A stretch of 64,000 bases of DNA from Macrostomum lignano. Taxonomy: Eukaryota. A model generated the notes under the pieces. That model was not told the DNA's origin and searched no databases. It was given only the letters and a program-made list of their open reading frames with translations. A program made the position numbers and the translations under genes. The DNA lies in contig NIVC01001215.1 of assembly GCA_002269645.1 (NCBI GenBank), positions 148,022 through 212,021 on the forward strand. Direction: 5' to 3'. Numbering within the stretch: position 1 is the stretch's first letter; each line of letters starts with the position of its first letter. Below are positions 10,001 through 40,492 of the stretch, piece after piece.

Positions 10001-12287
10001 GAAAGTCTTTAAAACTCCTACCAGTAGATACTACTTCTGTAGGCTTGGCCAACCGTCTGAAGGTGAAGGTGTCCATAGACATCAGTGAAGCATCCGCGCC
10101 AGTATCAAATACCATATCCACGATCGTCCCACACTCTTGACTGACCGTTGATCTGCACACGCTTAGAAATCCTACTCTTACTGGCTGACAGTGAGAAGAT
10201 TTTGCTGCACTTTTATTCGTCCGACAACTGTTCACGCTGCCGTTGCTCTTGCATCAATCTCACTCTTGATGGTCCTCGTTGGTCACTTCGGAATTTCGAA
10301 GCTTTGCACATATTTTTTAAATGGCCTTCTTTACCGCATTTATCACACTTTCGTGTTTTGAAGCGACACTTAGTTTTCATATGGCCAACTTTTCCACAGC
10401 AAAGACAAGTAATCTCCTTGCTACTTCTTCCCTCTGCATTCCTTGTAGGTTGGCTCTTCCGGTACTCACCACTTCTCTGTGGCTGCTGCCGACTTGTGAT
10501 ATGCCGTGTTTGTAGTACGTTGGAGCCAGATATATGCTTTTCACTCTTTTGCACCGCTTCGCAGGCTGTCGCCACTGCCGTAACTCTTTCCCATGTCTGT
10601 TTCTCAATATCCTCCTCAAGTAGCTTGCGGAGGATTTCTTTATTATACAGTCCAAATATGAACTGATCGCGGAGTCGGTTCTTGCCCTCGTCCTCTCCGA
10701 ATCTGCAGTCTTCAGAAAGCTGCCTTAACCTTCTGCCGTATGTAACAATGTCTTCATTGGCCTCTTGTTTTGCTTTATGAAATTCGTATCTGCATGCAAT
10801 CGTTGGCTTTTCCATTCTGACTTGATTCTTGAGAAGTTGGCTTAGATAATCATACGTCTTCTTCTCAAGTTTGTACGGAACAATAGCGTCAGCGAGCATA
10901 TTGAATGTCTTCTTACCAATCAAGGCCAGGAAGGCATTGCGCTTTTTGTCATCTTTCCAGTCGTTTAGAGAGGCACATATTTCGAAGCGCTGATTCCATC
11001 TTTGGGGATCCTCGCCTTCGTCTAGTAGTTCCATAGTTGGCGTCCTCGTCGCCATTGTTATCGTCGTGGGCTTTTACGACAACATAACTCACAAAAGACT
11101 TGGAATATTAAAACTTTGATTTTTACCGACACTCGGTACATTCTCGATACAACTCGCGTCTTCCTTTTCCTTCCTTTTATTTGCTAACTGCCCTTTATTA
11201 TACAGCACTTTGTAGTCTAGGCTCTCTTAGCCATAGACAAGTTTTCGTGGCATACGAAGCCACTAACATAGGCGTTGGGTGCGACTGCAGATCCCCATTA
11301 GCTCATAGGGATGCTGGGCTTAGCTGCAGATCCCCATCAGCTCATAGGGATGCTGGGCTTAGCTGCAGATCCCCATCAGCTCATAGGGATGCTGGGCTTA
11401 GCTGCAGATCCCGATGTGGGCCCTAAACTCTAAAAATCCACCCGGCCAAACCCACCTGCAGGTCGTCGATCTCGTCCCACTCCACCCTCCGCCAGTGCCG
11501 CCTCCCGCCCTGACCGCCGCAACCTGCGGCCTCCGCCTCGGCAGTCGAAGCCTCCGCAGCAGCGGCGGCGCCAAAAGTTTCAAGCCGCCGGCGTGCCAGC
11601 CTCGCCAGGAGGTCGAGCCGGCCAGCGGTCTCGCTGGTCTCCGCAGCCGCGGCTGCCGCTTCGCAGCCTTCGGCCAGCAGGCGGAGCTCGCGAAACTCCG
11701 GCGGCAGGCGAAGCAGCTCCTGGAACGGCTCGGCAAGCCAAGCATTCAGCGTCACCAGCAGCGCCGCGCGCAGCCGCTCCGAGTTCACCCGGCTGCTGCC
11801 GTTGCGGAGCCTGGGAGAAAAATCACCGATGTACTACTACTGATTTGAATAATAAGTATTCAGCATATAACGTATTGAGTCTTGACCACTTGCAGCACAT
11901 GAGCAAACTCACTTGTCAAATACGATCTGCAGCAGCTCCTCGGTGCTAGCAAAAGCCGGATAGGTGGTGAGCAGAATGTTCATGTGCAGGCAGTCCACCT
12001 TGTCCTCCAGGTGGTCCGGTGGCGCCAGGCCTTCCACGATGGCCTCAAGAGAGCCGGCCATGAAAATGCAGGCTCGATCTTCTGGAGGCTGTTCCAGCTG
12101 TCGATGCTGTGGTGTTTATTTGGGTAGCTTAATATTTGGGTAATGTATAGGGCATAATGATATAGTTGGGCTACAGATACTATGTACTGCTTACCAGAGA
12201 ACCAGTTGCAGAAACAAACTGCTTTTTCATCTTCATAGTGTAGACAGCATAGCCCTCTTCCACAATTTCTGTTGGTGGAGAGTCTTC
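7019..12287 (-). CDS. RalGDS/RGL-like Ras guanine nucleotide exchange factor (REM + CDC25 domains), partial; exons 12287-12195, 12097-11913, 11810-11456, 8072-7566, 7305-7019
   Basis: REM motif AGSLEAIVEGL...LLTTYPAFASTEELL; CDC25 motifs VAEQLTRLDARLFESV, FSSLCAIVCTL, VPYLGTFLTDL, NFDKRRREY; N-terminal EEGYAVYTMKMKK resembles RGL proteins; all introns GT-AG and phase-consistent. Start exon and downstream exons not located. Confidence 0.88.
7365..7545. repeat. Degenerate ~27-bp intronic tandem repeat (CAGTCACTCCGGATT...)
   Basis: Recurring CAGTCACTC core. Confidence 0.7.
8231..10235 (-). pseudogene. pol: Disrupted pol (PR, partial RT, RNase H, partial IN) with frameshifts, an RT deletion and a 469-bp tandem duplication
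   Basis: FDTGADASL; WATPIVCVRKQNGRIRLCGDYK; jump from PSIED to ASPYGIG near 9575; AERNYAQ...TDHRPL; LHEGHLG...WSRVHIDF duplicated at 8258-8726 and 8727-9195. Confidence 0.9.
10213..11055 (-). CDS. gag: Gag protein (280 aa, two CCHC zinc knuckles)
   Basis: CLCCGKVGHMKTKC and CDKCGKEGHLKNMC. Confidence 0.88.
   Translation of the reverse strand: MATRTPTMELLDEGEDPQRWNQRFEICASLNDWKDDKKRNAFLALIGKKTFNMLADAIVPYKLEKKTYDYLSQLLKNQVRMEKPTIACRYEFHKAKQEANEDIVTYGRRLRQLSEDCRFGEDEGKNRLRDQFIFGLYNKEILRKLLEEDIEKQTWERVTAVATACEAVQKSEKHISGSNVLQTRHITSRQQPQRSGEYRKSQPTRNAEGRSSKEITCLCCGKVGHMKTKCRFKTRKCDKCGKEGHLKNMCKASKFRSDQRGPSRVRLMQEQRQREQLSDE
11285..11413. repeat. 39-bp intronic tandem repeat, ~3.3 copies
   Basis: CTGCAGATCCCC starts at 11285, 11324, 11363 and 11402. 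Confidence 0.9.
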
Positions 12288-14104: not shown

Positions 14105-16833
14105 TCAGGTCACGGACTTCTGCCCGCTGGCATCCATTTTGGCCCGCTTCTTGTTGATGGCGTCTTCAACGGCCTTCAGCTGCTCCAACAGCTGCTCCTT
14201 GCGAGACAGCGCCGTGGAGGACCGCTTCTTGCCAGAGGCCTCCGTGCCGGAATCTTTGCTGGGCGTTGGACGCGACGGCCGCGGCTCCCGAGAGTCGTGT
14301 GTCCGGGCTGCGGGTGGCAGAGGCAAAAACGAACGGGTTTGAGTAAGTTAAAAAATCGTGTCTAATGCCTGGCTGAACTGCTTCAATTACATGATTTATT
14401 ATACATTATTCTCATCACCCAGGCCATTATTATCACATGATTGTTAGCTTGCAGAGACGCAAGTAGTCATTATCTATTCCCAGAGCAGGCACACAGGGTG
14501 TACGGCACAGACTTTCTTTCCGTTAGGCCTGTACATACTCTGTGAGGTTCGCCCTATGGGTGAGAGTTGCACGCCAAATATCTGTGCACGAGATCAAAGT
14601 TGTACGAGTCAGGCTCACTACTAAGATTCTGCATCACTACTAAGCTAAAGAAAACAGGCCAATTTAGAGTTTAGCAAAGCCCGGACAAGGCGGGGGTCTC
14701 ACATTTTCTAGACTCGCTTGGCTCCGCAGGCCGCTGGCGCTTCCCCGCCTCAGCCACCTCAGAGGAGCTCGGCCGGCGCTTCCGTGCTGCTCTAGCGCGG
14801 CTCCTTTGATCTGGCGGTGGCCTCCTTTGATCTGGCGGTGGCCTCCTTTGATCTGGCGGTGGCCTCCTTTGATCTGGCGGTGGCACAGCGGTCGATGACG
14901 GAGGCGGCGGCGGAAGGACAGCGTGCGAGCGGAGCTTCCCGCCCACGTGGCCAGCAATGGCGGGCGGTTGGCCGTCGGCATGCGGCGTTGCCGGCTTCTG
15001 CTTCTGACGCCGCTGCTCGCCGTCGCTGTTCTCTGCAGAGGACGACGAGGAATCAGCGGAGCTGGACGAGGAGCCGCCAGATGAAGACGACGATGACGAG
15101 GACGAGGATGAGCTAGAAGACGCAGAGCTGGCCGAGTCCGTGCGGCGGCGTGACGGTGGCATCGGCCGTTCTGCGCCGTCAGTTGCTGCAGCCGTCTCAG
15201 CGGCATTGCCGACGGCGCCGTCTCTGTAGGCAGCCGGCAGCGGGCGACGCTCTGGTTGAGCCGACGCGGGCGGCGGCGGCCGTTCTTTCCAGCGTTGCGG
15301 GCCGCGGCCCCGCTCGGAGGAGGCCGCCGACGAGGAGGAAGAGGAGGAGCCGGAGGAGGAGGAAGAGGAGGACGAGGAGCGGCGGGAGCGCGAGGACGAG
15401 GAGGAGCCGCTGCTGGAGTCCGAGGAGGCGCCCTGGCGACGCCGGCGCTGCTGAGCGGCGCGGTTGCGGTCCCAGGGGTCCACCCAGGCCGCTGGTCCTC
15501 CGCCAGAGTCTCCTGGAGGCCGCGGACGACCACGCCGTTGCCAGCCAGACTCCGGCGGTGGGCCGGTGCCGTCGTGACCGTCACCGTTCTCACCGCGGCG
15601 GTGTCGCCTGTGCGGTGGCTGCTGCGGCTGGCGGTGGTGGCGGCCACCGGTCGGCGCTCCTGAAGCAGCGGCATCCGGGCCGCCAGATGCTTCAGCGCGG
15701 GCGCTGGCGGCAGCAGCGGCGGCTTCTCGCTGCCGCTTCTCCATTTCACGGCGCCACCGCCGGGTCTCCTGGACTTCGCGGAACACGTCTCTATAGTACT
15801 CGATGTCCTCCTCCTGCGGAAGCGGGTCGTGAAAGCGGGCAATAAGATCGATCTTATAAAAATGAAGGTCAGCAACTCTGGCCAGCAGTATTAATTCAGC
15901 TCCTTGCACTTCTACAGTTTGCCTATAGGTGCGGCTGTTTTTGACACAGATCCAGCGAAATGGGGCCTCACCTTCTCCTCAGCAGCTGCCAGTGCAGCGG
16001 CAGCACCGGCAGCGGCCTCGGCTGCGGCAGAGTCCCCGTTGTCCTCACCGACATCGTCGATGTCTCTGGGTAGGAAGCGTTTCCGCTTGAGGTCCTCGGC
16101 AGCGGCCTGGTAGTACTCACAGAACATGGGCTCCGGCTCCGGCCGGGCCACCAGTGCGGTCGGCAGGCGCGGCGCGGGCTTCTTTTTTGAGGCTGGCGGC
16201 GCCTTCTGCTGCGGAGGCTGCGGAGGAGCCGGCGGCGGTGGTGCCGGCTTCGGCTTCGGTGTCAAGGTGGTGGCGGCCGACAGCTGCTTGGCCAGGGCTT
16301 CATCTCTGGCTGCCGGCAGGTTCAGCTTCTTCTCCTTGAAGGCCTCCGCCTCCATGGCACGCCGCTCCTGCGCCTTGGCGCGGCGCTCGCGAGCAATGCG
16401 CAGCGCCTTCTCCCATGGTGTCTCCGGCTTCGAGGCCTCTGCCGACTCGGCCGTCGCAGCAGCGTCTGCGGCCACCGGCGCCACCTCCTCCTCCTCCAGC
16501 CGCGGCGGCAGCCGAGGCAGCAGCAGCAGCGGCGGCAGCCGAGGCAGCAGCAGCAGCGGCGGCGGCCGCCTCGTCCTCAGACAGCACCTCGCCCTCCTCG
16601 AAGTCCTTGGAGCCGTCACCGCGGACTTCGCCTTCCTCGTCGCTGGTGCGAACTTCGCCATCGCTGACGCTCGAGTCGGACGCCTCGCCGTCGTCTTCCG
16701 CGACTTGGACAGCCGCTGGCGCCGCTTGCGGAGCCTCCCGGGGCACGTCATCGACAAAGTCCAGCTGCTCTTCTTCATCGTCGCCGTCTGGGGGATGCCC
16801 GGCCGCAGCCTGGGCGAGCGTTGGCAAGGACAT
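14105..16833 (-). CDS. ZC3H18: ZC3H18-like protein; exons 16833-15972 (apparent 1-nt frameshift near 16497), 15852-14703, 14307-14105
   Basis: C-terminal LSRKEQLLEQLKAVEDAINKKRAK, TPWEKALRIARE...FKEKK and EEGEV motifs recall ZC3H18; long Ser/Arg-rich middle; introns phase-consistent. No CCCH finger seen. Confidence 0.65.
14812..14884 (-). repeat. 21-bp coding repeat (PPPDQRR, 3-4 copies)
   Basis: CTCCTTTGATCTGGCGGTGGC units inside exon 2. Confidence 0.85.
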
Positions 16834-17441
16834 TGGCGGGCTGGGAGCGGCAGGTAGCTGCGGTGCAGTTCGAAATGCATTACTTGTGTTTAGGTCAGGT
16901 TAAGTCAGAAAGCAACACAGTCCTACTCGAGCACACATTCAATTTAATTGAAGGCATAAAAATTCACTGATCTACAGATTACTATCGATTGATCATATAC
17001 ATGGGTTCTGATTATGTATCCAGTATTTTTTTACATTAAAATGCCAAAATGATCTGACACTTTATGGATAAAAATTGAATTCTTTATTAAATATAAATTT
17101 ATAATAAATGAATAGTTCTATAAAAGTATTCTACCAGGTTGTCTAGAAGGTTATTGCACTTTGCCTTTGGTTTAATAACTTTTGCTGGGTAAAAATAGAA
17201 ATTTTTAGATCTTAAATAAAAAGTTATTAATCTAATAAATACTAAGATAGTATAAGATCTCAAATGAACTTTTATGGGTAGGTCTAACAAACTAAATACT
17301 TTAATAAAAAATCTATATTTATTTAGATTAATTGTATGTTCAAGAATTTATAACTACACTTTTTTAGGTTTTTATTGTTCTTAATAAGTTGATCCTATTC
17401 AACCCTTGAGACGATAGTAAGACAAAATAGACCATTATAAT

Positions 17442-21686: not shown

Positions 21687-24600
21687 TCACCCCCTGGCCG
21701 GCTGCTGCAGCCGGTAGACGAAGGCGGCGAACGCCAGCGTTAGCAGAAACACCAGCACGGAGGTCAGGCTGGGCAGCAGGCCGCCCAGGCTGCGCGGCTC
21801 CGAGGCTGCAGCGGCATCGCCGGCTGCGAGGGCGGCGCCGCGGCCCGGCAGGCCGTACAGCGGGCGCATGCAGGAGCGCAGGCTGGCGTACAGGTCGGGG
21901 AACTGGCACTCCTGCTCGGCCAGTAGCTGCTTGACCCGGAACCGCTCGGTCGGTGTCCGGAAGCAGGCCGGACAGTTGTCCGGAATGACGGGCAGACCGG
22001 CCAGGTCGGCGAACTCTCTGGTGCTGCTCTCGCGGACGTACACGAAGGGCCGGATGACGCGAAGGTCGCCCGTCTCCACGGTGTAATTGGCTTTCATCGT
22101 GCGCAGGCAGCCGTTGTGGAAGGCGGACATCAGGAAGCTCTCGGCCAGGTCGTCCAGGTGCTGCCCCATCGCCAGCACGTTGTAGCCGTGGCGCCTGGCC
22201 GTGGCGTACAGGCGGCCGCGCTTCATGCGGGCGCAGTAGGCGCAGATGGAGTCGCAGTCCACCCTGCAGTTGTGGGGGTCACCAAGAATGATCAGTTAAG
22301 CCTGTGGGGACTCTGGGGTGCTCTAAAAACTCTGTTGATCTGAGGAGTCTGGGGTGCTCTGAGGACTCTGGGGTGCTCTGAGGACTCTGTGGTGATCTGA
22401 GAAGTCTGGGGTGCTCTGAGGACTCTGGGGTGCTCTGAGGACTCTGTGGTGATCTGAGAAGTCTCGGGTGCTCTGAGGACTCTGGGGTGCTCTGAGGACT
22501 CTGTGGTGATCTGAGAAGTCTCGGGTGCTCTGAGGACTCTGGGGTGCTCTGAGGACTCTGTGGTGATCTGAGAAGTCTGGGTGCTCTGAGGACTCTCCAG
22601 GGTGCTCTGAGGACTCTGGGGTGCTCTGAGGACTCTGTGGTGCTCTGAGGACTCTGTGGTGATCTGAGAAGTCTGGGGTGCTCTGAGGACTCTGGGGTGA
22701 TCTGAGAAGTCTGGGTGCTCTGAGGACTCTGGGGTGCTCTGAGAAGTCTGGGTGCTCTGAGGACTCTGTGGTGATCTGAGAAGTCTGGGGTGCTCTGAGG
22801 ACTCTGGGGTGCTCTGAGGACTCTGTGGTGATCTGAGAAGTCTGGGGTGCTCTGAGGACTCTGGGGTGCTCTGAGGACTCTGTGGTGAACTGAGAAGTCT
22901 GGGGTGCTCTGAGGACTCTGGGGTGCTCTGAGGACTCTGGGGTGCTCTGAGGACTCTGTGGTGATCTGAGAAGTCTCGGGTGCTCTGAGGACTCTGGGGT
23001 GCTCTGAGGACTCTGGGGTGCTCTGAGGTGAGGAGTCTGGGGTAATCTGAGGACCTGGGATGCTCTGAGGACTCTGTGATGCGCATTACACCTTCGCACC
23101 GATTTCAACTGCAGCTAGTTGAAATTTACAGGTGATCTAATGGGTGAGCTAATCGGTGAGCTACACATGTAATAAACAAAAACACGATAGAAAATTCGAG
23201 CCGAACTCACTTAGCCGCCTCCTCCATGATGCACTGCCGCTCAAAGTAGTAGGTAACGCCCAGGCGCTCCAGGTAGCCAATCAGAGGCGAGGGGTCGTAC
23301 GAGTTGCTGACGGGGTCCACGGTGCACGCGGCCAGCTGGAAGCGCGGACCCGAAGTCCGGTCAGCGTAGGCCTGGAACTGATGCAGCGCGTGCAGCAGGC
23401 TGAGCGAGTCCTTGCCGCCCGACAGGCAGATGAGCACCCGGTCGCCGTCCCGGATCATCTCGAACTCCTCCATGGCCTCCAGGAAAGGCCGGAAGATATT
23501 GCGGGGCGGCGAGCGCCACAGCGTGCCCGGCTTGCAGAATTTCTTGCGGCGCTTCTCCAACAGCTGCTGCTGGCTCAGCTGTGGCTTCTGCTTTTTCTGC
23601 TGTTGCGTCTGCTTCTCCGGTGACCGCGGCTGTTGGCGCCGGTTGCGGAGGCCGCAGGCGGGGGCGGAGGCGGCGGTGGAGGCGGCGGCAGAGGACGGCG
23701 GAGGCAGAGGAGGCGTCGGCGGCGGCAGCTCGGAGTCGGCTGCGGCGGGGAAGACGGGCAGGAGGCGGCCGGGCTGCACCGGACAGGCGGCAGCGGTGGC
23801 GTCCACCGCGGGTTGCTGAGGGGCGTCGCCGGCCAAAGCATTCTCGGCCTCGCAGGGCAGGAGGAACCAGCGCAGGCGGCCGGACTCCTCGTCGAACATC
23901 TGCGTGGCGTCCGAGTGGCGCCGGCTGCCCCGATGCGACAACGAGCGGCGCACCAGCTCGTCGGCCTCGGCCATCAGCTGGGCAAAGTCCAGCGACCTGC
24001 GGCAGCGGCCGTGGGGAGGGCGAAAACAGGTGTTGTGCAAAATTCAAAATAACACCTAAAATTATTAACAATCTGAACTTTCAGAGAATCGGGGCAGTCT
24101 TGCTTTAATGCTGCCGATTATAATATCCGGTGGCCTTGCGTTTCTTCATTAAGACGCAATATATGACGTGGGATGCAGCGTTTCCCCTATTATTACACCA
24201 AACTAGCAGCGCTACTAAATCTGTTAAAAAATGCTGCGACAAAGACCTGGATGAAGACTGCCGCCGCCGCTGCCGGCCTCCTCCGGCGCCGCCAGACGCA
24301 GAGGCCGGGTAGGTCATCTGGCCGCTGGCGTAGGAGACGCGGCTCAGCCACAGGCGCTCAGGGAACGGGTCGTGTCCGATGGCCCGCCACTCGGCCGTCT
24401 CTGGGTTCACCTTGTACAGCGGCAGCAGCTTCCAGCCGTGCTCGCCGACCCAGCGCAGGCAGCGGAGAACAAAGACGGCCTCCTGGTCGGGCATGAAGAA
24501 CGGCAGGTTGATGCGGACAAAGCCGGGCCGCAGCAGCTCCCTGTGCGGGTAGTCAAAATACTTGCTGCGCACGAACTGCCCCATGCCGCTGCGCCCAACC

Positions 24601-27449
24601 AGAGCCGCCTCCAGGCGGGCTGCCACCGGCTCGCTGATTCCCAGCAAGTCCATCGCGTACGGCCCAGCGCAGGCGCAGCCGCTGCGTGCCTGGATGCCGA
24701 ACAGGTCGTTCAGCAGCGTGGCCACGAACTGCGGGCGGGGATGGCCCCTTGGGGTGAGTCCGAGGCCTGTGTGGCATGGATGCAGCACTGAGTGAGTCTG
24801 TGTGGCATGGATGCAGCACTGAGTGAGTCTGTGTGGCATGGATGCAGCACTGAGTGAGTCTGTGTGGCATGGATGCAGCACTGAGTGAGTCTGTGTGGCA
24901 TGGATGCAGCACTGAGTGAGTCTGTGTGGCATGGATGCAGCACTGAGTGAGTCTGTGTGGCATGGATGCAGCACTGAGTGAGTCTGTGTGGCATGGATGC
25001 AGCACTGAGTGAGTCTGTGTGGCATGGATGCAGCACTGAGTGAGTCTGTGTGGCATGGATGCAGCACTGAGTGAGTCTGTGTGGCATGGATGCAGCACTG
25101 AGTGAGTCTGTGTGGCATGGATGCAGCACTGAGTGAGTCTGTGTGGCATGGATGCAGCACTGAGTGAGTCTGTGTGGCATGGATGCAGCACTGAGTGAGT
25201 CTGTGTGGCATGGATGCAGCACTGAGTGAGTCTGTGTGGCATGGATGCAGCACTGAGTGAGTCTGTGTGGCATGGATGCAGCACTGAGTGAGTCTGTGTG
25301 GCATGGATGCAGCACTGAGTGAGTCCTAATTCACAACAAATCCTAAAAAATCAGCACTGATTTGCAAAATCCGTCAAAATCATCGCTAAGAAAATTTGAA
25401 AGAAAAATTTTTAGATCAAAGGAAAAATTGAAGCAAAGCAGCAGCCAGCAGGCGCTGGGAACAAGGCTAGCATGGGGTGTCGAATATCTCAGCAGCTGCT
25501 CCCAGCCCAATGCCCTAATTACCATATGATGGAGCAGCAGGCCCGAGGCCGGATGCCGCACCACGAAGCTGAACAGCGGCAGGCGCTGCAGCTCGCGCCC
25601 GCCCAGCACAGAGATGCCCTCGGCGCCGTGCAGCTCACGCCAGGTCAGGTCGCACAGATGGCGCTCCCGCTTGGCCAGCAGGTCCTGGCCGACCGTCCGC
25701 TTCAGCTGCAGCACCAGGCCGGCCCGGATGCTCTCCACGATAGCCGGCGTGCCGCCCTCCTCCCGGTGCTCCGCCTCGTCCAGGAAGATTCGGCGCTCCC
25801 GGCGCACGAAGAAGACGGTGCCGCCGCCCACGCCGTCTGGCACGGGGCTGCTGAGGAGCGCCCGCTTCACTATCAGCACGCCGGGTGTCTGCACTCCGCC
25901 CACGAACTTGTGGCAGGAGAAGTACACGGCGTCCTTGTAGGACAGGCCGGCGTCTTCCACGGGGTTCATGTCGATGGGCACGTAGGGCGCCGCGGCTGCG
26001 TAGTCGAAGAAGGCGAGGGCGCCGTGGCGGTGCAGCAAGCAGGCGAGACGCACCGTGTCGCTCAGCACGCCGGTGATGTTGGAGGCCGCGGCGAAGCAGC
26101 CGATGACGCGACGGTCGGGGTTGGCGCCGGGCTCAGCCGCAGCCTCCTTGAGCAGCCGCTCCAGCTGGTCCAGGTTCACCGCCCCCTCGGGAGTGGGCTC
26201 GATGCGAATCACCTCGGCAGCCACCTCCTGCCACGGCAGCAGGTTCGAGTGGTGCTCGTAGGGCCCGACGAATACCAGCTGGGGGTGACGGAGGGATCGG
26301 CAAAGTTAGCAGTAGCAACCAGGGTCCAGTCTGGAAACCAGCTGTCCTGAATATCCCAACCAGCTGTCCTGAATATTGCAATCAGCTGTCCTGAATATCC
26401 CAACAAGCTGTCCTGAATATCCCAACAAGCTGTCCTGAATATCCCAACCAGCTGTCCTGAATATTCCAACCAGCTGTCCTGAATATTCCAACAAGCTGTC
26501 CTGAATATTCCTACCAGCTGTCCTGAATATTCCTACCAGCTGTCCTGAATATTCCTACCAGCTGTCCGGAATATTCCAACCAGCTGTCCTGAATATTCCA
26601 ACCAGCTGTCCTGAATATTTAATCTTCAGTCCAAAGGACCTCAGCACTACAATTAACTTTATATTTAGAACTCACCGGAGGCACCTTGAGCTGCAGGTTG
26701 TGGATGAGCTTGTGCACAGCGCCGGTGCAGCCGCTCCCAGTGAAGATGACGGCGTCCAGATCGCTGGCCCGGCAGCAGTTCCTCACAATGTCCCTGGCCT
26801 CGTCCCGGAACATGGTGGTCTGCAGCGAGGTGACCCCTGTGGTGGTGTGCGTGTTGCCGTAGTGGGTCAGCACCTCATCGCGGATGTAGTCCTCGATGAA
26901 GCTGAGAGCCCTGCCGGAGGCTGTGTAGTCGCAGTAAACCAGGTGCCGCTGACCGAACGGCCCATTGAAAGGCATGTAGGAGCCGATGACGGACCTGCGT
27001 GGGGTTTTTTTAATGGTGAATCCCGGTGGTAAATTGAAGTTGCTGGGTTCGATTTCTCGTGTGGTTAAATTAAATCTGGCGTTTACTTTGAGATTTACAA
27101 GTCATGAGGGCATGCTATACACTCTATGAGTCATGAGTGCCATGAGTACAAATCTATGGGTATATGGGAACAAACATATCTACTTGCCTCCTTGACTGGC
27201 TATGGGTCAGCTGTCTCCAGAAGCCCCAATGTGACTAACCAAACCTAAACAGGAAAATATGCTGTAAAACAAGTAAAGAATCTATGCAACAAACCTATTG
27301 ATGTAGTCTAGCAGAGCGTGCCCAGCTGGTTCCTCATTCTCTGCTGGCTGCTGGCTGTCCTGTCTTGGGATTTCATAGAATTTCCGAGGCTGGTGCTCTG
27401 TCTTGGCTGGAGAATCTGGTGCCACCTGCTGCTGCTGTTCTTGGCTCAT
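21687..27449 (-). CDS. Fusion of class-V PLP cysteine-desulfurase-like domain and TtcA-type PP-loop tRNA 2-thiolation domain, with C-terminal hydrophobic segment (1024 aa); exons 27449-27295, 26994-26676, 26278-25523, 24728-24247, 23996-23211, 22263-21687
   Basis: Desulfurase motifs YCDYTASG, GPYEHHSN, FDYAAAAPY, SCHK (PLP Lys), EEGGTP, RSGCACA (persulfide Cys); TtcA motifs SGGKDS, CAYCARMKRG, GQHLDD, VIRP, NCPAC. Exons sum to 3075 nt in frame; the intron 4 donor (GTCTTT) is weak. Confidence 0.9.
22305..23080. repeat. Intronic minisatellite built on 10/20-bp units (GGACTCTGGGGTGCTCTGAG with TGATCTGAGAAGTCT variants)
   Basis: Direct tandem periodicity in intron 5. Confidence 0.95.
24767..25325. 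repeat. 31-bp homogeneous intronic minisatellite, ~18 copies
   Basis: GTGTGGCATGGATGCAGCACTGAGTGAGTCT units in intron 3. Confidence 0.97.
26335..26618. repeat. 20-21-bp intronic minisatellite (CCAGCTGTCCTGAATATTCC)
   Basis: About 13 units in intron 2. Confidence 0.95.
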
Positions 27450-35908: not shown

Positions 35909-38900
35909 TTAGAGTTCCACTTCCATGCCGACATCAGGTAGGTCCGGGTCGCCTTCAGCGAGCACTTCCGGATGACGCAAACTTGGCTCGAACAGCTGGC
36001 TGCCCCGCAGGTCGGGCTGAGCTGTGGTTGGCTGTACTTGCGCGTGCTGATCGGCGGAGTCGGCTTCGCTGTCGTTACTCGACTCATAGGGCAGCATTGG
36101 CCTCTCAGTCTGGCGCGGCGGCTCCTGTGGCCGGTCGGCCATCATCTGCGGCACCTTGATGATGTTATTGCGATGTACCAACATTTCAGCCGGGCGTCCT
36201 CGGCGAGCTGTCGCCGGTCTAATCCAGTACGCCACTTCTCCGACTTTCCTAACGACCTTGTACATGCTTTTGTAGGGCCGGTGGAATTTAGGCAGCTCTC
36301 CCAGTTCAAGCTTCGGGTTGGCCAGGCAGACAAGGTCGCCGGGCTGCAATTCCACGGGCTTAGGTCGATTTTCATAATATTCTTCACGGCGTTGGATCTC
36401 AGCTCGCAGACGTTGCCGTACAATGCGCTCAGTCTCGGCCAGTCGGCGCTGGTGCTTCGCGATGTATTCTGGGAGGTCAGCTGATACATCCAAGCGGTCT
36501 AGGGTGTTGTCGATAGGGTATCGATAAGGCATTCCGTAGACGACATAGTGCGGCGAGAAACCAGTAGTACGATTGACGGCTGATCGTAGTGCAGTCAAAG
36601 CGGCTGGCAGCATCTTGTCCCATTGCTGGTGGTCTTCTAGGAGACAAGTGAGCACCTTCTTGATATTCTTGTTACACGACTCGGCTTGTCCATTAGCCCA
36701 GGGCGAGTATGGCGGTGTCGTAGTCTGTCGTATGCCATAGACTTCGCAGAAATGTCGGAACTCATGCCCTGTGAACTGCTTGCCTTGATCAGAGTGAATC
36801 CACGCCGGGATTCCAGTGATCGGGAAGACCTGTTCCTGCAGGAGAGTTATGATCGTCTTGGCCCGCTGATTTTTCATGGCGAAGGCGAAGGGATATTTCG
36901 ACGTTGTGTCAACGTAGGTCAAGATGTACTTGTTTCCCCGGTCAGTAGGATCTCCAGTGGGGCCTAAGATATCAATCGCACATCGCCCATAGATTTCACA
37001 TACCGGAAACGATTGTACATGCGCCGGAATTCGTCGTCGCCCTTTGCTCTGCGTGCAAGTCTGGCAGGAAGCGACATAGTCGGACACTGCTTTAGCTAGG
37101 GCAGGTCGCCAGAATCTTTCGCGCACTTTTGCAATGGTGAGGTCTCGACCCATGTGTCCGCAGTACGGCGAGCCATGCAGGTCGGCTAACACCGTGGCGT
37201 CGAGACTTTTCGGCAAGACGATTCGCGCTATCTCCTCCTCGCCAACATCGTCGAGATGAATCACTAGTAGTCCGTCGTCTCGAACTTCGAGCTGCTCGTA
37301 AAACGCTAGCAAATTTCGCTCATCTCTTGTCATATTCAATCGCTGATTCAGCGGCGGCTTGGGTTGTCGACTTTCGATAAGGTTGATCACCATAGAGATG
37401 GCAGAGTCAGCACGCTGATGGGTCTGGAGCTCCTCGCGGGTGACTGGCCTCGGAATGTGATCAGTTAGATTCAAAGTTCGGCGTCGATCAGTAGGATTAG
37501 ACGGTGCGGCTTCGGCTGTGGCGACATGGTTCGGGGTCTGGAGCTCCCTACGCATGATGGCTACTTGGGCCGGTCGCCGTGTTGTCGATGTGTCCGAGGG
37601 TCGATCCTCGTCAGTGGCTTCGGCGTCACTGTCGCTCAATCCTGATTCGTCAGCAGATGAGAATGATGAGGCAGCACTATCAGCATCAAGGCTAAACCTC
37701 ACCTTCTTGAACCTTGGGCAGCGAGCGGGTTGGCAGCGGTCATCTCGGGCTGCACTGTGGTCGCTGTCCTCGCCCTCTCCAGCTCGTAGTCGGCGGCTCC
37801 TCGCGGGGCAACGTGTCGTGCTAACGAGACTAGTGGGCGATCGCTGCGAGTCCTTGTAACGACTGGCCGTTGGCCTTGGCTTCGTCGCCGGCGGGTGCAG
37901 CTCTGTCAGCGGCCTGCTGTCGGCTGTCGGTGTTGCTGGCGGCGTAGCCTCGCCGTTGGACTCCTTCGGCTTTGTCGGCGGTCGTCGTCGATTCCGGCGG
38001 GTCGATGGCTTCTTGCTCGGTGGAGGGCTAGGGTGGCTGCTGTCAAGGACCTTCGGCGCCGCTGCGCCAGTTATCGCGGCTGGCTGCTTACTTTGGTCCT
38101 CGTCTGCTGCCTCTCGCTGAGCCTCCTCCATGCATTCAGCGTCGTCCTCTGGCCGTCTCGATAGGCCGTCGGCATTCTGGTGCTGACTCGATTTGCGATG
38201 CTGGATCTCGAACTCGAATTCGCTTAGGCGCTGTAGCCATCGTCCAAAGATGCCTACTTGTTGAGTTCGCCGGAGAATCCAGGTCAACGCTGCGTGATCA
38301 GTTCGACAAATAAACTTCTTGGCCAGCAGGTAGAATCGGAAATGTCGCATGCCGTCTACAACTGCCAAGAGTTCCTGCTTTGTTATCGGATATCGCGCTT
38401 CAGCTGGTTTGAGTCGCCGGGAGAAATAGCCAATTGGTCGTTCGATTCCATCAGCTTGGCGCTGGCTCAGACATGCTCCGATTCTGGTCGCAGAAGCATC
38501 CGTGTCCAGGACAAACATGACGTTGGGGTCTTCGCTGAACTGCGGATACGCGAGCACTGAGGTCGAAGTCATGGCCGCTTTAAGCTGGTCGAACGCGTCT
38601 TGTTGGGCTTTCCCCCATAGACAGTTAAAGTTGCGAATTTTCTTCTCTTTAATTACATCGTGGAGTGGAGCTGCCAACTCTGCGTAGCCAGGTACAAATT
38701 TTGCATAGTAAGCACACGTGCAGACGAAACTTTTCAGTTGCCGGGCAGTTCTTGGTCTCGGCCAGGTTTGGATTGCTTCGATTTTCGCCGGATCGGTCTT
38801 GATGCCGTCTTTCGTAACTAGATGTCCCAAATAATGGAGGCTTTCCCGAAATAAATGACACTTCTTGCCTTTGAACTTTAAGTTAGCGCCTTGGACTCGT

Positions 38901-40492
38901 TTGAAGACTTCCTCCATATGTCGAAGATGGTCGTCGAATTTCTTGGAATACACGATGACGTCATCCAAATAGGCTATGGCACTTTTGTAGGCTATCCCTT
39001 GAAGTACAGCGTTCATGAGGCGCATGAAGCTGGCTGGTGCTGAACTTAATCCCATCGGCATAACATTGTAGGCAAATTGCCCTCTGTGCAGCGTAGCAAA
39101 GGCTGTCAGATCTTGGTCTTCTGGACGCAGAGGTATCTGATAATAACCGCTATTCAAGTCGAAGGTGCTAAATAGTTGACTTCCTTCGAGGCTGGCGAAT
39201 GCTTCTTGGATATTCGGTATCGGGTACGGAAAGTACTCACACTTCTGGTTCAGACTCCGGAAATCTTGTACAATTCTCAGGCTTCCGTCCTTCTTTGGGA
39301 TGATCACGAGCGGGGTGTTGTAATTCGAGAAGCTTGGTCGGATCACGCCTTTGGCAAGCAGATCATCTAGTAGCTGGTCCACTTTGGGCAACAGGTGCGG
39401 CGGAATCCGTCGGGTCGGCAGGTGTACAGGATCCTTATCCTTCAGTACGATGTTGTGGGTGACCAGGTGAGTTCGACCTAGATCGTGCGGTCCTTGGGAG
39501 AAGATGTTCTTGTACTTCTTCAGCAGCTTGATTACTTGAGCGCGCTGGTCACTGGACAAGTCCTCGCCGATATCGACCTCTTTAATCCAAGCATCCGGAT
39601 CTTCATCCTGAATCTGCTTGACAGAGACTTCTGGCTGTGGAAGCGGGTAGAATTGCAGTTCTGGCAGTCTAAGTGGTCTTGCAATCCCGATAAGTGCATT
39701 CGCTCGTACTTTAATAGATGTTGTACCGCGATTAATCATTTCGATTGCACCTTCACCATTGACCATAGATATTAGCGCAGGCGCAGCGTCCAGGTGCTGC
39801 ACCTCGTCTTCGCGTCTGGCTGGTTTCAGCGGCTCGATAACTGCCGGTGTTCCTTGATTGTCTTCACGCCCTTTAGCTAGCTTAATTCTAATTCGGGCCG
39901 ATGATAATGGTGGCACTGTGGTGCTTTCGGCCGTGTAGATTCTGCACGTGGTAGCTTCAGCTCGCGTGTAGCGGAGTGGGGCGGCTGTGCCGTTCTTGAA
40001 AAACAGCATCCCGGCTGCGAGGTCGAGGGAGTTGCTGTGCTTCTCCAGGAACTCGAAACCCAGGATGTTATCATGAGATCCTTGTGCTAGCAGAAAATTG
40101 ACTGTCGACTCGAAGTTGCCGATCTTCATCTTGATCGCAAGCTGTCCTGCCATCTTGATTGGTTCACCATTGTAGGTCACGATTCGCTCTAGACAGGGCT
40201 TGATTTGTCCACGCAGAGAGGGGTCGTCGATGCAGAGTCGGTGCCAAGTGCTGAATCCGAGGACCTCGCACTTAGAGCCAGTATCAAGCAAGAAAGCAAA
40301 ATAACGCCCATTAATCTCACCAGTTATAAACGGGTCTCTCCGAGGGCGCTTGGGTGCAGAGTTCTGTACAGGTGCGGAGGCGGTCTCAGCAGTAGCCTGC
40401 TGAGCGACTAAAGTCCGCGGCGGGGACTTTAGTGCTGGCTCGGCCGCTGGATGGCGCTGCCCCCGATGGCGCGTCCAGCCGTCGCGTTTCCC
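35909..40492 (-). CDS. pol: Pol polyprotein (protease, RT, RNase H, integrase), probably expressed by -1 frameshift from gag
   Basis: LLDTGS, YLDDV, DTDAS/TDHAAL, HGSPYCGH...CQTC, IDILGP...HSDQG...NGQAES; uninterrupted ORF. Confidence 0.96.
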   Translation of the reverse strand, partial: GKRDGWTRHRGQRHPAAEPALKSPPRTLVAQQATAETASAPVQNSAPKRPRRDPFITGEINGRYFAFLLDTGSKCEVLGFSTWHRLCIDDPSLRGQIKPCLERIVTYNGEPIKMAGQLAIKMKIGNFESTVNFLLAQGSHDNILGFEFLEKHSNSLDLAAGMLFFKNGTAAPLRYTRAEATTCRIYTAESTTVPPLSSARIRIKLAKGREDNQGTPAVIEPLKPARREDEVQHLDAAPALISMVNGEGAIEMINRGTTSIKVRANALIGIARPLRLPELQFYPLPQPEVSVKQIQDEDPDAWIKEVDIGEDLSSDQRAQVIKLLKKYKNIFSQGPHDLGRTHLVTHNIVLKDKDPVHLPTRRIPPHLLPKVDQLLDDLLAKGVIRPSFSNYNTPLVIIPKKDGSLRIVQDFRSLNQKCEYFPYPIPNIQEAFASLEGSQLFSTFDLNSGYYQIPLRPEDQDLTAFATLHRGQFAYNVMPMGLSSAPASFMRLMNAVLQGIAYKSAIAYLDDVIVYSKKFDDHLRHMEEVFKRVQGANLKFKGKKCHLFRESLHYLGHLVTKDGIKTDPAKIEAIQTWPRPRTARQLKSFVCTCAYYAKFVPGYAELAAPLHDVIKEKKIRNFNCLWGKAQQDAFDQLKAAMTSTSVLAYPQFSEDPNVMFVLDTDASATRIGACLSQRQADGIERPIGYFSRRLKPAEARYPITKQELLAVVDGMRHFRFYLLAKKFICRTDHAALTWILRRTQQVGIFGRWLQRLSEFEFEIQHRKSSQHQNADGLSRRPEDDAECMEEAQREAADEDQSKQPAAITGAAAPKVLDSSHPSPPPSKKPSTRRNRRRPPTKPKESNGEATPPATPTADSRPLTELHPPATKPRPTASRYKDSQRSPTSLVSTTRCPARSRRLRAGEGEDSDHSAARDDRCQPARCPRFKKVRFSLDADSAASSFSSADESGLSDSDAEATDEDRPSDTSTTRRPAQVAIMRRELQTPNHVATAEAAPSNPTDRRRTLNLTDHIPRPVTREELQTHQRADSAISMVINLIESRQPKPPLNQRLNMTRDERNLLAFYEQLEVRDDGLLVIHLDDVGEEEIARIVLPKSLDATVLADLHGSPYCGHMGRDLTIAKVRERFWRPALAKAVSDYVASCQTCTQSKGRRRIPAHVQSFPVCEIYGRCAIDILGPTGDPTDRGNKYILTYVDTTSKYPFAFAMKNQRAKTIITLLQEQVFPITGIPAWIHSDQGKQFTGHEFRHFCEVYGIRQTTTPPYSPWANGQAESCNKNIKKVLTCLLEDHQQWDKMLPAALTALRSAVNRTTGFSPHYVVYGMPYRYPIDNTLDRLDVSADLPEYIAKHQRRLAETERIVRQRLRAEIQRREEYYENRPKPVELQPGDLVCLANPKLELGELPKFHRPYKSMYKVVRKVGEVAYWIRPATARRGRPAEMLVHRNNIIKVPQMMADRPQEPPRQTERPMLPYESSNDSEADSADQHAQVQPTTAQPDLRGSQLFEPSLRHPEVLAEGDPDLPDVGMEVEL

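What the first reader, a model, noticed from the sequence alone, without database searches (positions are those of the whole stretch)
21687..27449. Animal gene fusing a cysteine-desulfurase-like domain to a bacterial-type TtcA tRNA thiolase
Seen: six phase-consistent exons give one 1024-aa protein with intact desulfurase motifs (SCHK, RSGCACA) and intact TtcA motifs (SGGKDS; two CxxC, CAYC and CPAC; GQHLDD). Known: bacterial TtcA makes 2-thiocytidine at tRNA position 32 using ATP, a [4Fe-4S] cluster and sulfur from a separate desulfurase (IscS); s2C32 is regarded as a prokaryotic modification, and eukaryotic CTU1/Ncs6 carries extra zinc-finger CxxC pairs that are absent here. Inference: a self-contained sulfur relay, architecturally analogous to Moco sulfurase, that could install s2C or thiolate another substrate in an animal. 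Similar fusions may already exist as unstudied automatic annotations; I cannot check that.
Basis: partly seen in the sequence, partly recalled or inferred. Interest (0 to 1): 0.88.

Follow-up and report, generated by a model that had tools for sequence, protein, structure and literature searches.

The report
Flatworm desulfurase–TtcA fusion gene (known family)
This is a real six-exon flatworm gene that joins a sulfur-releasing enzyme to a bacterial-type tRNA-thiolating enzyme; the same fused gene occurs across invertebrate animals and several protist groups, and a 2026 preprint has already linked it to the first 2-thiocytidine found in an animal tRNA, so it is a sound but no longer new observation.

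Summary
On the minus strand, 27449-21687, six GT-AG exons give a 1024-aa protein. It is identical to Macrostomum lignano PAA70675.1 (Mlig012232g1). The N-terminal ~590 aa form a SufS/CsdA-type (type II) PLP desulfurase-like module (PLP Lys282, persulfide Cys430). After a disordered linker comes a TtcA-like PP-loop domain (SGGKDS, Cys840/843, Cys930/933).

The domain junction lies inside exon 5, so these are not two genes.

The C-domain scores 175 bits on the NCBIfam TtcA model against 30-34 bits on NcsA/TtuA. It is 32% identical to E. coli TtcA and 51-59% identical to stand-alone TtcA-like proteins of sulfur-oxidising Proteobacteria.

The fusion is not specific to animals. It occurs from sponges to tunicates, in nematodes, and in oomycetes, diatoms and Perkinsus.

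A preprint of 28 Sep 2026 found s2C32 on Aplysia tRNA-Lys(UUU) and pointed to the Aplysia orthologue, which is 51% identical to this protein.

Function remains untested. This analysis adds the catalytic Cys assignment, the wide eukaryotic distribution, and a hydrophobic C-terminal tail found only in M. lignano.

The parts
21687..27449 (-). Whole coding region of the fusion gene (Mlig012232g1): ATG at 27449-27447, TGA at 21689-21687, 1024 aa
   Evidence: model. (exact match to PAA70675.1). (annotated gene span on NIVC01001215.1).
27295..27449 (-). Exon 1 (aa 1-52, poorly conserved N-terminus; phase-2 donor AG|GTTTGT)
   Evidence: AF2 pLDDT is below 50 for aa 1-39.
26676..26994 (-). Exon 2 (aa 52-158, start of the PLP fold)
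25523..26278 (-). Exon 3 (aa 159-410). Carries His167-His168 (26249-26254) and the PLP lysine K282 (25907-25909, motif SCHK)
24247..24728 (-). Exon 4 (aa 411-571). Carries RSGCACAG (24663-24686) with the predicted persulfide Cys430 (24669-24671), and the family-specific extension (RPGF..., GWKLLPLY)
23211..23996 (-). Exon 5 (aa 571-833), a single open exon. It holds the last helices of the N-module (RWFLLPCEA, 23846-23872), the disordered linker (23525-23818) and the first half of the TtcA-like domain with the PP-loop SGGKDS (23405-23422)
21687..22263 (-). Exon 6 (aa 833-1024). Carries CAYC Cys840/843 (22233-22244), GQHLDD (22149-22166), CPAC Cys930/933 (21963-21974), a hydrophobic C-terminal tail aa 992-1017 (21711-21788), and the stop codon
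26336..26619 (.). Minisatellite filling intron 2 (22 bp x 13)
24767..25325 (.). Minisatellite filling intron 3 (31 bp x 18, 100% identical copies). An older gene model (P0125) reads through this intron's donor and truncates
22308..23076 (.). Minisatellite filling intron 5 (19 bp x 40)

Best explanation
A single nuclear gene of the flatworm Macrostomum lignano encodes one polypeptide with two enzymes.

(1) Residues ~40-625 form a PLP-dependent, SufS/CsdA-type (type II) cysteine-desulfurase-like module. The Schiff-base lysine is K282 and the persulfide-carrying cysteine is C430.

(2) After a ~100-residue disordered linker, residues ~735-970 form a TtcA-like PP-loop ATPase. Cys840, Cys843 and Cys933 (and/or Cys930) are expected to hold a [4Fe-4S] cluster with one free iron site.

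Proposed mechanism (inferred): the N-module takes sulfur from L-cysteine as a Cys430 persulfide. The flexible linker lets that loop deliver sulfur to the cluster of the C-domain, in cis or across a dimer. The PP-loop adenylates C2 of a tRNA cytidine. The cluster-bound sulfide then displaces AMP to give 2-thiocytidine, most probably at position 32.

Shown here: the gene structure, the domain identities, the conservation of all catalytic residues, and orthology to the Aplysia gene. Inferred: desulfurase activity, intramolecular sulfur hand-off, Fe-S content, tRNA substrate and position.

The gene is a member of an old eukaryotic family (Metazoa and SAR protists), not an animal invention.
For: Gene model and exact GenBank match.

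Single transcript. Exon 5 alone spans the end of the N-module and the PP-loop. The Mlig_3_7 annotation that gives the 1026-aa product is RNA-seq-derived and was cut at observed trans-splice and polyA sites (PMC5730564). Intronless transcriptome ORFs of full length exist in other species, for example Calanus, Oscarella and ~3.2-kb Logan contigs.

N-module. The best PDB sequence matches are all SufS/CsdA (2.4e-30). The alignments place HH167-168 on SufS HH, K282 on the PLP Lys, and C430 on the SufS catalytic Cys in R-x-G-H-H-C. The AF2 model's top Foldseek hits are E. coli SufS, with TM-score normalised to the target length (TMt) of 0.76-0.80.

C-domain. NCBIfam gives TtcA 175 bits against NcsA 30 and TtuA 34. 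The BLAST alignment to E. coli TtcA puts C840/C843 on C122/C125 and C930/C933 on the CNLC pair. Cys122, Cys125 and 'Cys222' are the essential cluster ligands in E. coli (PMC4081106).

Conservation. C428, C430, C840, C843, C930, C933, K282 and SGGKDS are invariant in 120 orthologues.

Function. s2C32 was detected on Aplysia tRNA-Lys(UUU), and the Aplysia orthologue was the only TtcA homologue retrieved. That orthologue is P0130/P0047, E 1.1e-286 to this protein.
Against: No experiment links any member of this family to s2C; the Aplysia link is correlative.

The C-domain and its closest bacterial relatives score below the curated TtcA cut-off: 175 and 201-221 bits against 272. They are only 32-44% identical to E. 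coli TtcA, so the clade could have a different specificity.

The N-module also exists as a stand-alone protein in bacteria, algae and animals. Its function therefore need not be tied to TtcA.

It scores far below the SufS cut-off (120 against 475 bits).

Type II desulfurases normally need a dedicated acceptor such as SufE, SufU or CsdE, and none is evident here.

The AF2 model gives no usable information on how the two domains dock (pTM 0.59, linker pLDDT about 30).
Confidence: 0.6

Rival explanations
1. The architecture is the same, but the PP-loop domain thiolates a different target. This could be another tRNA position or nucleoside, another RNA, or a small molecule. The TtcA-like clade would then be a functional sister of canonical TtcA rather than an s2C32 synthase.
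For: The C-domain and its closest bacterial relatives fall below the NCBIfam TtcA equivalog cut-off. In the NJ tree they sit on a long branch away from E. coli TtcA. Identity to E. coli TtcA is only 32%. The closest bacterial relatives found here are sulfur-oxidising Gamma- and Betaproteobacteria, although that scan was seeded with patterns taken from the eukaryotic proteins.
Against: TtcA is by far the best-scoring family, ahead of the other PP-loop families TilS (55 bits), TtuA (34) and NcsA (30). All three cluster-ligand cysteines align with those of TtcA. s2C32 is physically present in a mollusc whose only TtcA homologue is this fusion.
Confidence: 0.17
2. The two halves work independently. 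The N-module is a general sulfur- or selenium-mobilising enzyme, like its stand-alone paralogues. The TtcA domain gets its cluster and sulfur from the normal NFS1/ISC-CIA route. The polypeptide may even be cleaved in the disordered linker, as the preprint suggests. The fusion would then only co-regulate expression.
For: Stand-alone N-modules with the same motifs occur in Actinobacteria, the green alga Ostreobium, amphioxus, Styela and Solemya. The linker is about 100 residues long, unconserved and predicted disordered. Of 119 orthologues, 89 have an acidic C-terminal tail, and 3 fit the published CIA-targeting tripeptide. In the bacterial loci fetched, the two gene types are never adjacent within 8 kb.
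Against: The fusion has been kept across several hundred sampled proteins of Metazoa and SAR lineages, with every catalytic residue of both halves invariant in the 120 orthologues aligned. This argues for functional coupling.
Confidence: 0.2
3. The fusion is an artefact: either two neighbouring genes were wrongly joined, or the sequence is bacterial contamination.
For: Older UniProt models of M. lignano list separate 'Aminotran_5' (469 aa) and 'ATP_bind_3' (404 aa) proteins.
Against: The 469-aa model simply reads through the intron-3 donor into the minisatellite, and the 404-aa model is a 5'-truncated piece of exon 5. Exon 5 is one open frame that contains the end of the N-module and the PP-loop. 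The gene has five GT-AG introns and sits among retrotransposons and other animal genes. The same architecture occurs in several hundred eukaryotic proteins, including transcriptome ORFs.
Confidence: 0.02

Closest known systems
Aplysia californica LOC101861551, the 'IscS-TtcA' fusion (XP_005111426.3; bioRxiv 10.64898/2026.09.27.754811)
   Same: It is an orthologue: same two-domain order, 51% identity over the conserved parts, E 1.1e-286. Aplysia K301, C448 and C450 correspond to K282, C428 and C430 here. The arrangement SGGKDS, C-x2-C, CPAC is the same.
   Different: The Aplysia protein is 1177 aa, with a ~400-aa linker and an acidic C-terminus. The M. lignano protein is 1024 aa and ends in a hydrophobic helix. 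The preprint could not assign the catalytic Cys and listed Cys588 as a candidate. That position is not Cys in M. lignano, and alignment to SufS singles out C450 in Aplysia, equal to C430 here.
Escherichia coli TtcA (tRNA-cytidine(32) 2-sulfurtransferase, b1344)
   Same: It has the PP-loop SGGKDS, the central C-x2-C and the distal C-x2-C cluster ligands. It is alignable over 227 residues, E 7e-40. The [4Fe-4S]-dependent mechanism is established (PMC4081106).
   Different: Identity is only 32%. E. coli TtcA is stand-alone (311 aa) and takes sulfur from the separate type I desulfurase IscS. The motifs differ: GHHRDD against GQHLDD, and CNLC against CPAC. The window protein fails the curated TtcA HMM cut-off (175 < 272 bits).
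Stand-alone ~250-aa TtcA-like proteins of sulfur-oxidising Gamma- and Betaproteobacteria (e.g. Thermithiobacillus tepidarius NZ_CP133759.1, locus L074; Thiofilum flexile, L009)
   Same: They are 51-59% identical (median 55%) to the C-domain across its whole length, with near-identical motifs: GLSGGKDSLSLLH, QHLDDLAESFLMSAFHNG, ENCPACF. They are sister to the eukaryotic domains in the NJ tree.
   Different: They are single-domain. No N-module-type desulfurase lies within 8 kb. The genes flanking the L074 copy encode a PBP1-type penicillin-binding protein (transglycosylase/transpeptidase domains) and Hsp33.
SufS/CsdA type II cysteine desulfurases
   Same: The fold matches (Foldseek TMt 0.76-0.80). 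The HH dyad, PLP lysine and catalytic Cys loop align.
   Different: Sequence identity in the structural alignments is about 22%, and the score is below the SufS subfamily cut-off (120 against 475 bits). The signature G-C-x-C-A-G-P-Y replaces G-H-H-C-A-x-P. There is an extra ~190-residue C-terminal extension ending in RWFxxPxEA. No SufE, SufU or CsdE partner is known.
Stand-alone N-module family (actinobacterial loci L001-L007; Branchiostoma 'probable cysteine desulfurase' XP_066305031.1; Styela LOC120337785; Ostreobium CAD7704183.1)
   Same: Bacterial members are 40-47% identical over query residues ~30-625. All signature motifs are shared, including the terminal RWF.LP.EA.
   Different: They have no PP-loop domain, and their function is unknown.
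CTU1/Ncs6, NcsA and TtuA (group II PP-loop thiolases)
   Same: They belong to the same superfamily, with a PP-loop and a three-Cys [4Fe-4S] site. PDB matches to TtuA and NcsA have E-values from 3e-7 to 9e-4.
   Different: Scores are far weaker: 30-34 bits against cut-offs of 450-500. The terminal zinc-finger CxxC pairs are absent. These enzymes use a ubiquitin-like thiocarboxylate donor (URM1 or TtuB).
Molybdenum cofactor sulfurase (MOCOS/ABA3)
   Same: The architectural logic is the same: an N-terminal NifS-like desulfurase is fused to the domain that uses the sulfur.
   Different: The C-terminal domain is unrelated (MOSC), and there is no Pfam MOSC hit here. The resemblance is an analogy only.

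Membership tests
TtcA (tRNA-cytidine(32) 2-sulfurtransferase, NCBIfam NF007972) | PP-loop ATP-binding motif SGGxDS | tested here: met
   SGGKDS at aa 763-768, invariant in 120 orthologues.
TtcA (tRNA-cytidine(32) 2-sulfurtransferase, NCBIfam NF007972) | Central Cys-x-x-Cys (E. coli C122/C125) plus a distal Cys (paper numbering C222) as [4Fe-4S] ligands | tested here: met
   C840/C843 align to C122/C125. C930/C933 align to the E. coli CNLC pair. The ligand assignment comes from PMC4081106. All four Cys are invariant.
TtcA (tRNA-cytidine(32) 2-sulfurtransferase, NCBIfam NF007972) | Score at or above the curated equivalog cut-off (272 bits) | tested here: not met
   175 bits. The closest bacterial relatives score 201-221 bits. 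The protein is therefore filed as TtcA-like, not as a proven TtcA equivalog.
TtcA (tRNA-cytidine(32) 2-sulfurtransferase, NCBIfam NF007972) | Makes s2C at tRNA position 32 | not testable with these tools
   The only evidence is correlative: s2C32 in Aplysia, whose genome carries the orthologue.
CTU1/Ncs6/NcsA/TtuA (group II) | Additional N- and C-terminal zinc-finger CxxC pairs, and a family HMM score | tested here: not met
   There are no further conserved CxxC pairs. NcsA scores 30 bits and TtuA 34 bits against cut-offs of 500 and 450. Pfam reports only Aminotran_5 and ATP_bind_3.
Type II cysteine desulfurase (SufS/CsdA) | PLP-binding Lys, His-His dyad, and catalytic Cys in the R-x-G-x-x-C loop | tested here: met
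   K282, H167-H168 and C430 align to the SufS residues and are invariant across orthologues.
Type II cysteine desulfurase (SufS/CsdA) | Fold type I aminotransferase class V architecture resembling SufS | tested here: met
   The AF2 model has pLDDT mostly 80-95 over aa 45-530. The top 50 Foldseek hits are all SufS-type desulfurases.
Type II cysteine desulfurase (SufS/CsdA) | Score at or above the SufS subfamily cut-off (TIGR01979, 475 bits) | tested here: not met
   120 bits. This is a distinct subfamily with a G-C-x-C-A-G-P-Y loop and a C-terminal extension.
Type II cysteine desulfurase (SufS/CsdA) | Cysteine desulfurase activity (persulfide formation) | not testable with these tools
   This needs an enzyme assay.
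Eukaryotic desulfurase-TtcA fusion ('IscS-TtcA' of the Aplysia preprint) | One polypeptide with a CsdA-like domain N-terminal to a TtcA-like domain, and orthology to LOC101861551 | tested here: met
   In the NJ tree the M. lignano domain sits inside the metazoan clade.
Moco sulfurase (MOCOS) | C-terminal MOSC domain | tested here: not met
   No MOSC hit in Pfam. The resemblance is an architectural analogy only.

The most novel reading that the evidence does not exclude
The protein is a self-sufficient, single-polypeptide s2C32 synthase. Its own type II desulfurase loads sulfur directly onto the free iron of the TtcA-domain [4Fe-4S] cluster, without using the NFS1/URM1 relays. The fusion is ancient in eukaryotes (Metazoa and SAR). 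It may be absent from vertebrates and the classical model organisms, though this was not established here; such an absence would explain why s2C was taken to be prokaryotic. In M. lignano the enzyme has in addition acquired a tail anchor that tethers it to a membrane.
Probability: 0.35. Interest if true: 0.7.

Novelty: new member of a known kind. Interest (0 to 1): 0.5.

Why it matters
s2C32 was considered a bacterial and archaeal tRNA modification until a September 2026 preprint found it in Aplysia. The enzyme behind it in eukaryotes is still only a bioinformatic candidate.

M. lignano has transgenesis and an annotated genome (PMC5730564), so this locus offers a practical way to test the gene-to-modification link.

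This analysis also shows that the family is much broader than the preprint reported. It runs from sponges to tunicates and includes nematodes, oomycete plant pathogens and diatoms. The work pins the catalytic cysteine of the desulfurase half, and it shows that each half has its own stand-alone bacterial relatives.

If the intramolecular sulfur hand-off is real, it would be a compact model for how persulfide sulfur reaches an Fe-S-dependent thiolase.

Tried and rejected
- **Alternative terminal exon.** I looked for an exon encoding the acidic tail seen in orthologues. No D/E-rich open frame exists within ~4.8 kb downstream, so the hydrophobic tail appears genuine. It is found only in M. lignano, 1 of 120 sequences.
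- **Bacterial precursor.** I tested whether bacteria carry the two genes adjacent or fused. Neither is found within 8 kb in the 80 loci fetched. One actinobacterial N-module ORF has a cNMP-binding domain upstream in frame; I did not pursue this.
- **Solved TtcA structure.** None is in the PDB copy. The nearest are TtuA and NcsA.
- **tRNA genes and Rfam families in the window.** None were found.
- **CIA-targeting C-terminal tripeptide.** Only 3 of 119 orthologues fit strictly, so I made no claim.
- **Selenidium and Tiarina as independent protist lineages.** I treated both with caution. Selenidium may carry contamination from its host. Tiarina groups inside the diatoms, which suggests prey contamination.
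- **Vertebrates and C. elegans.** No named hit appears in any top-120 list. The lists are capped, so absence is not shown. The preprint's 'birds' remark could not be checked.
- **Domain docking.** It cannot be read from the AF2 output, because the tool does not return coordinates.
Full report
**1. The observation**

The gene lies on the minus strand. I translated all three minus-strand frames and located the splice junctions. I then assembled six exons: 27449-27295, 26994-26676, 26278-25523, 24728-24247, 23996-23211 and 22263-21687. Every intron begins with GT and ends with AG. The phases are consistent, and the product is 1024 aa ending in TGA at 21689-21687.

Pfam finds Aminotran_5 (aa 71-438, 1.5e-39) and ATP_bind_3 (aa 758-929, 1.8e-12). 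The protein is contained exactly in GenBank PAA70675.1, 'hypothetical protein BOX15_Mlig012232g1, partial' of Macrostomum lignano. A second genomic copy, g2 (PAA80656.1), differs by S598P. The window is part of contig NIVC01001215.1 of assembly GCA_002269645.1.

**2. One gene, not two**

Three points support a single gene.

- Exon 5 (23996-23211) is one uninterrupted open frame. It encodes the last conserved helices of the N-terminal module (RWFLLPCEA, aa 613-621), the linker, and the PP-loop SGGKDS (aa 763-768) of the C-terminal domain. The domain junction is therefore inside an exon, not at the exon 4-5 boundary.
- The Mlig_3_7 annotation that yields the 1026-aa product comes from a genome-guided RNA-seq assembly. 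Its transcriptional units were cut at experimentally observed trans-splice and polyadenylation sites (PMC5730564).
- Older split UniProt models are artefacts. The 469-aa 'Aminotran_5' model reads through the intron-3 donor into a minisatellite, and the 404-aa 'ATP_bind_3' model is a 5'-truncated piece of exon 5.

Full-length fused ORFs also occur in intronless transcriptome contigs of other species.

**3. The N-terminal module**

Sequence search of the PDB returns only SufS/CsdA-type desulfurases, the best being S. aureus SufS at 2.4e-30. The alignments put His167-His168 on the SufS His-His dyad, Lys282 (SCHK) on the PLP lysine, and Cys430 (RSGCAC430AG) on the catalytic cysteine of the SufS R-x-G-H-H-C loop.

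An AlphaFold2 model built on 25 orthologues is confident over aa 45-530 and over helices 575-625. Its top 50 Foldseek matches are all SufS-type enzymes, with TM-score normalised to the target length (TMt) of 0.74-0.80.

The module scores well below the SufS cut-off (120 against 475 bits) and has its own signatures:

- G-C-x-C-A-G-P-Y
- a ~190-residue extension containing GWKLLP.Y
- a terminal RWF.LP.EA

These signatures are shared by stand-alone proteins of Actinobacteria (40-47% identity over query residues ~30-625), a green alga, amphioxus, a tunicate and a bivalve. The N-half is therefore an old, distinct subfamily of type II desulfurase-like enzymes, about 590 aa long.

The Aplysia preprint could not name the catalytic cysteine and offered Cys448, Cys450 and Cys588. 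Cys448 and Cys450 equal Cys428 and Cys430 here. Cys588 is not conserved in M. lignano. The SufS alignment selects Cys430, which is Aplysia Cys450.

**4. The C-terminal domain**

NCBIfam ranks TtcA first at 175 bits. NcsA (30), TtuA (34) and TilS (55) score far lower, but 175 bits is below the TtcA equivalog cut-off of 272.

Against E. coli TtcA the domain is 32% identical over 227 residues. Cys840/Cys843 fall on Cys122/Cys125, and Cys930/Cys933 fall on the CNLC pair. In E. coli, Cys122, Cys125 and 'Cys222' are the essential ligands of the [4Fe-4S] cluster. 'Cys222' is the paper's numbering for the second Cys of CNLC. Only the cluster-bound form of the enzyme is active (PMC4081106).

No other CxxC pair is conserved, so the zinc fingers of the CTU1/Ncs6/TtuA group are absent.

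A pattern scan of one genome per bacterial species found stand-alone ~250-aa proteins that are 51-59% (median 55%) identical to the flatworm domain. They occur in sulfur-oxidising Gamma- and Betaproteobacteria such as Thiobacillus, Sedimenticola, Chromatiaceae, Thermithiobacillus and several bivalve symbionts. These bacterial proteins also fall short of the TtcA cut-off (201-221 bits) and are only 32-44% identical to E. coli TtcA.

A neighbour-joining tree rooted on E. coli TtcA places them with the eukaryotic domains. Metazoa, stramenopiles, alveolates and the bacteria each form their own group. The tree has no bootstrap support and only one canonical TtcA, so it shows grouping, not branching order.

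**5. Conservation and the linker**

Across 120 orthologues the invariant cysteines are exactly C428, C430, C840, C843, C930 and C933. K282 and the PP-loop are also invariant. Residues 631-728 are unconserved and predicted disordered.

**6. Distribution**

The same architecture (PF00266 with PF01171) fills the top 120 hits of three searches.

| Search | Groups found |
|---|---|
| Window protein | sponges, cnidarians, placozoans, echinoderms, hemichordates, amphioxus, molluscs, annelids, brachiopods, nemerteans, flukes and tapeworms, tardigrades, chelicerates, crustaceans, hemimetabolous insects |
| C. brenneri member | many nematodes (Caenorhabditis spp., Pristionchus, Haemonchus, Toxocara, Steinernema), plus Ciona, Styela and Trichoplax |
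| Triparma member | oomycetes (Phytophthora, Pythium, Saprolegnia, Albugo), diatoms, bolidophytes, a brown alga |

Perkinsus olseni and a lepidopteran also have it. No vertebrate and no named C. elegans protein appeared, but the lists are capped, so absence is not shown. The fusion is therefore not an animal invention.

Most members are 'uncharacterized'. Some carry automatic names such as 'tRNA 2-thiocytidine biosynthesis protein TtcA'.

**7. What is already published**

[quoted passage not shown] By BLAST it identifies LOC101861551, a 1177-aa CsdA plus TtcA-like protein, which it names IscS-TtcA. It notes the fusion in four mollusc classes and mentions a stand-alone CsdA-like paralogue. That protein is P0130/P0047 in my searches and is a clear orthologue of the window protein.

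No genetic or biochemical test has been reported. No other paper in the library connects this architecture with s2C.

**8. Mechanism proposed**

The following is inferred, except where stated.

- PLP on K282 converts cysteine to alanine and leaves a persulfide on C430.
- The long flexible linker allows this loop to reach the TtcA-like domain of the same or a partner chain.
- The sulfur is taken up at the free iron of a [4Fe-4S] cluster held by C840, C843 and C933 (or C930).
- The PP-loop adenylates C2 of cytidine 32, and the cluster-bound sulfide displaces AMP.

The last two steps follow the mechanism argued for E. coli TtcA. The main rival readings are a different thiolation target and functionally independent halves.

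**9. Particular to M. lignano**

The protein ends in a 22-residue hydrophobic helix followed by RLQQPARG (aa 992-1024; AF2 helix 999-1018). This looks like a tail anchor. None of 119 orthologues has it, and 89 of them end in an acidic tail instead. No alternative acidic exon lies downstream. Three of the five introns are almost entirely minisatellites.

**10. Verdict**

This is a new member of a family that has only just been recognised and is still experimentally untested. Its value lies in offering a tractable animal in which to test the function.

Noticed in passing
window 21711-21788 (aa 992-1017): The protein has a hydrophobic, tail-anchor-like C-terminus that is absent from all 119 other orthologues examined. 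Those mostly end in acidic tails. This may mean membrane tethering specific to Macrostomum.
   Followed up: partly
window 26336-26619, 24767-25325, 22308-23076: Introns 2, 3 and 5 of the gene consist almost wholly of minisatellites (22 bp x13; 31 bp x18, all copies identical; 19 bp x40). The intron-3 array coincides with the point where an older gene model broke.
   Followed up: partly
window 35909-42048, minus strand: An LTR-retrotransposon-type gag ORF (539 aa) overlaps a 1544-aa pol ORF carrying protease, RT, RNase H and integrase. Both are open. A second gag/zinc-knuckle fragment lies at 9723-11055.
   Followed up: partly
window 8258-9198: A perfect tandem duplication of a 469-bp unit (2.0 copies, 100% identical).
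   Followed up: no
window 7548-8072 (-), 53534-54148 (+), 14105-16844 (-): Exons of neighbouring animal genes: a RasGEF domain, an IMD (IRSp53/MIM) domain, and an annotated 719-aa low-complexity protein without a Pfam hit immediately downstream of the fusion gene.
   Followed up: partly
related proteins: Many Caenorhabditis species (brenneri, remanei, briggsae, tropicalis, japonica) have the fusion, but no named C. elegans protein appeared. No vertebrate appeared in any list either, while amphioxus and tunicates are present. These may be lineage losses but are unverified, because the lists are capped at 120.
   Followed up: partly
orthologue C-termini: Of 119 orthologues, 89 end in an acidic tail, often closed by a hydrophobic residue. 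Three match the published CIA-targeting tripeptide [LIM]-[DES]-[WF]. This hints that the Fe-S domain may be a client of the cytosolic Fe-S assembly machinery.
   Followed up: partly
L001 6222-9746: In a Thermoleophilia MAG, the stand-alone N-module ORF is preceded in the same frame by a cyclic-nucleotide-binding domain. This may be a regulated bacterial variant or simply an upstream gene in frame.
   Followed up: no
NJ tree: The 'Tiarina' (ciliate, MMETSP) sequence nests inside the diatoms, and the Selenidium sequences come from a parasite of polychaetes. Both may reflect contamination rather than true hosts of the gene.
   Followed up: no
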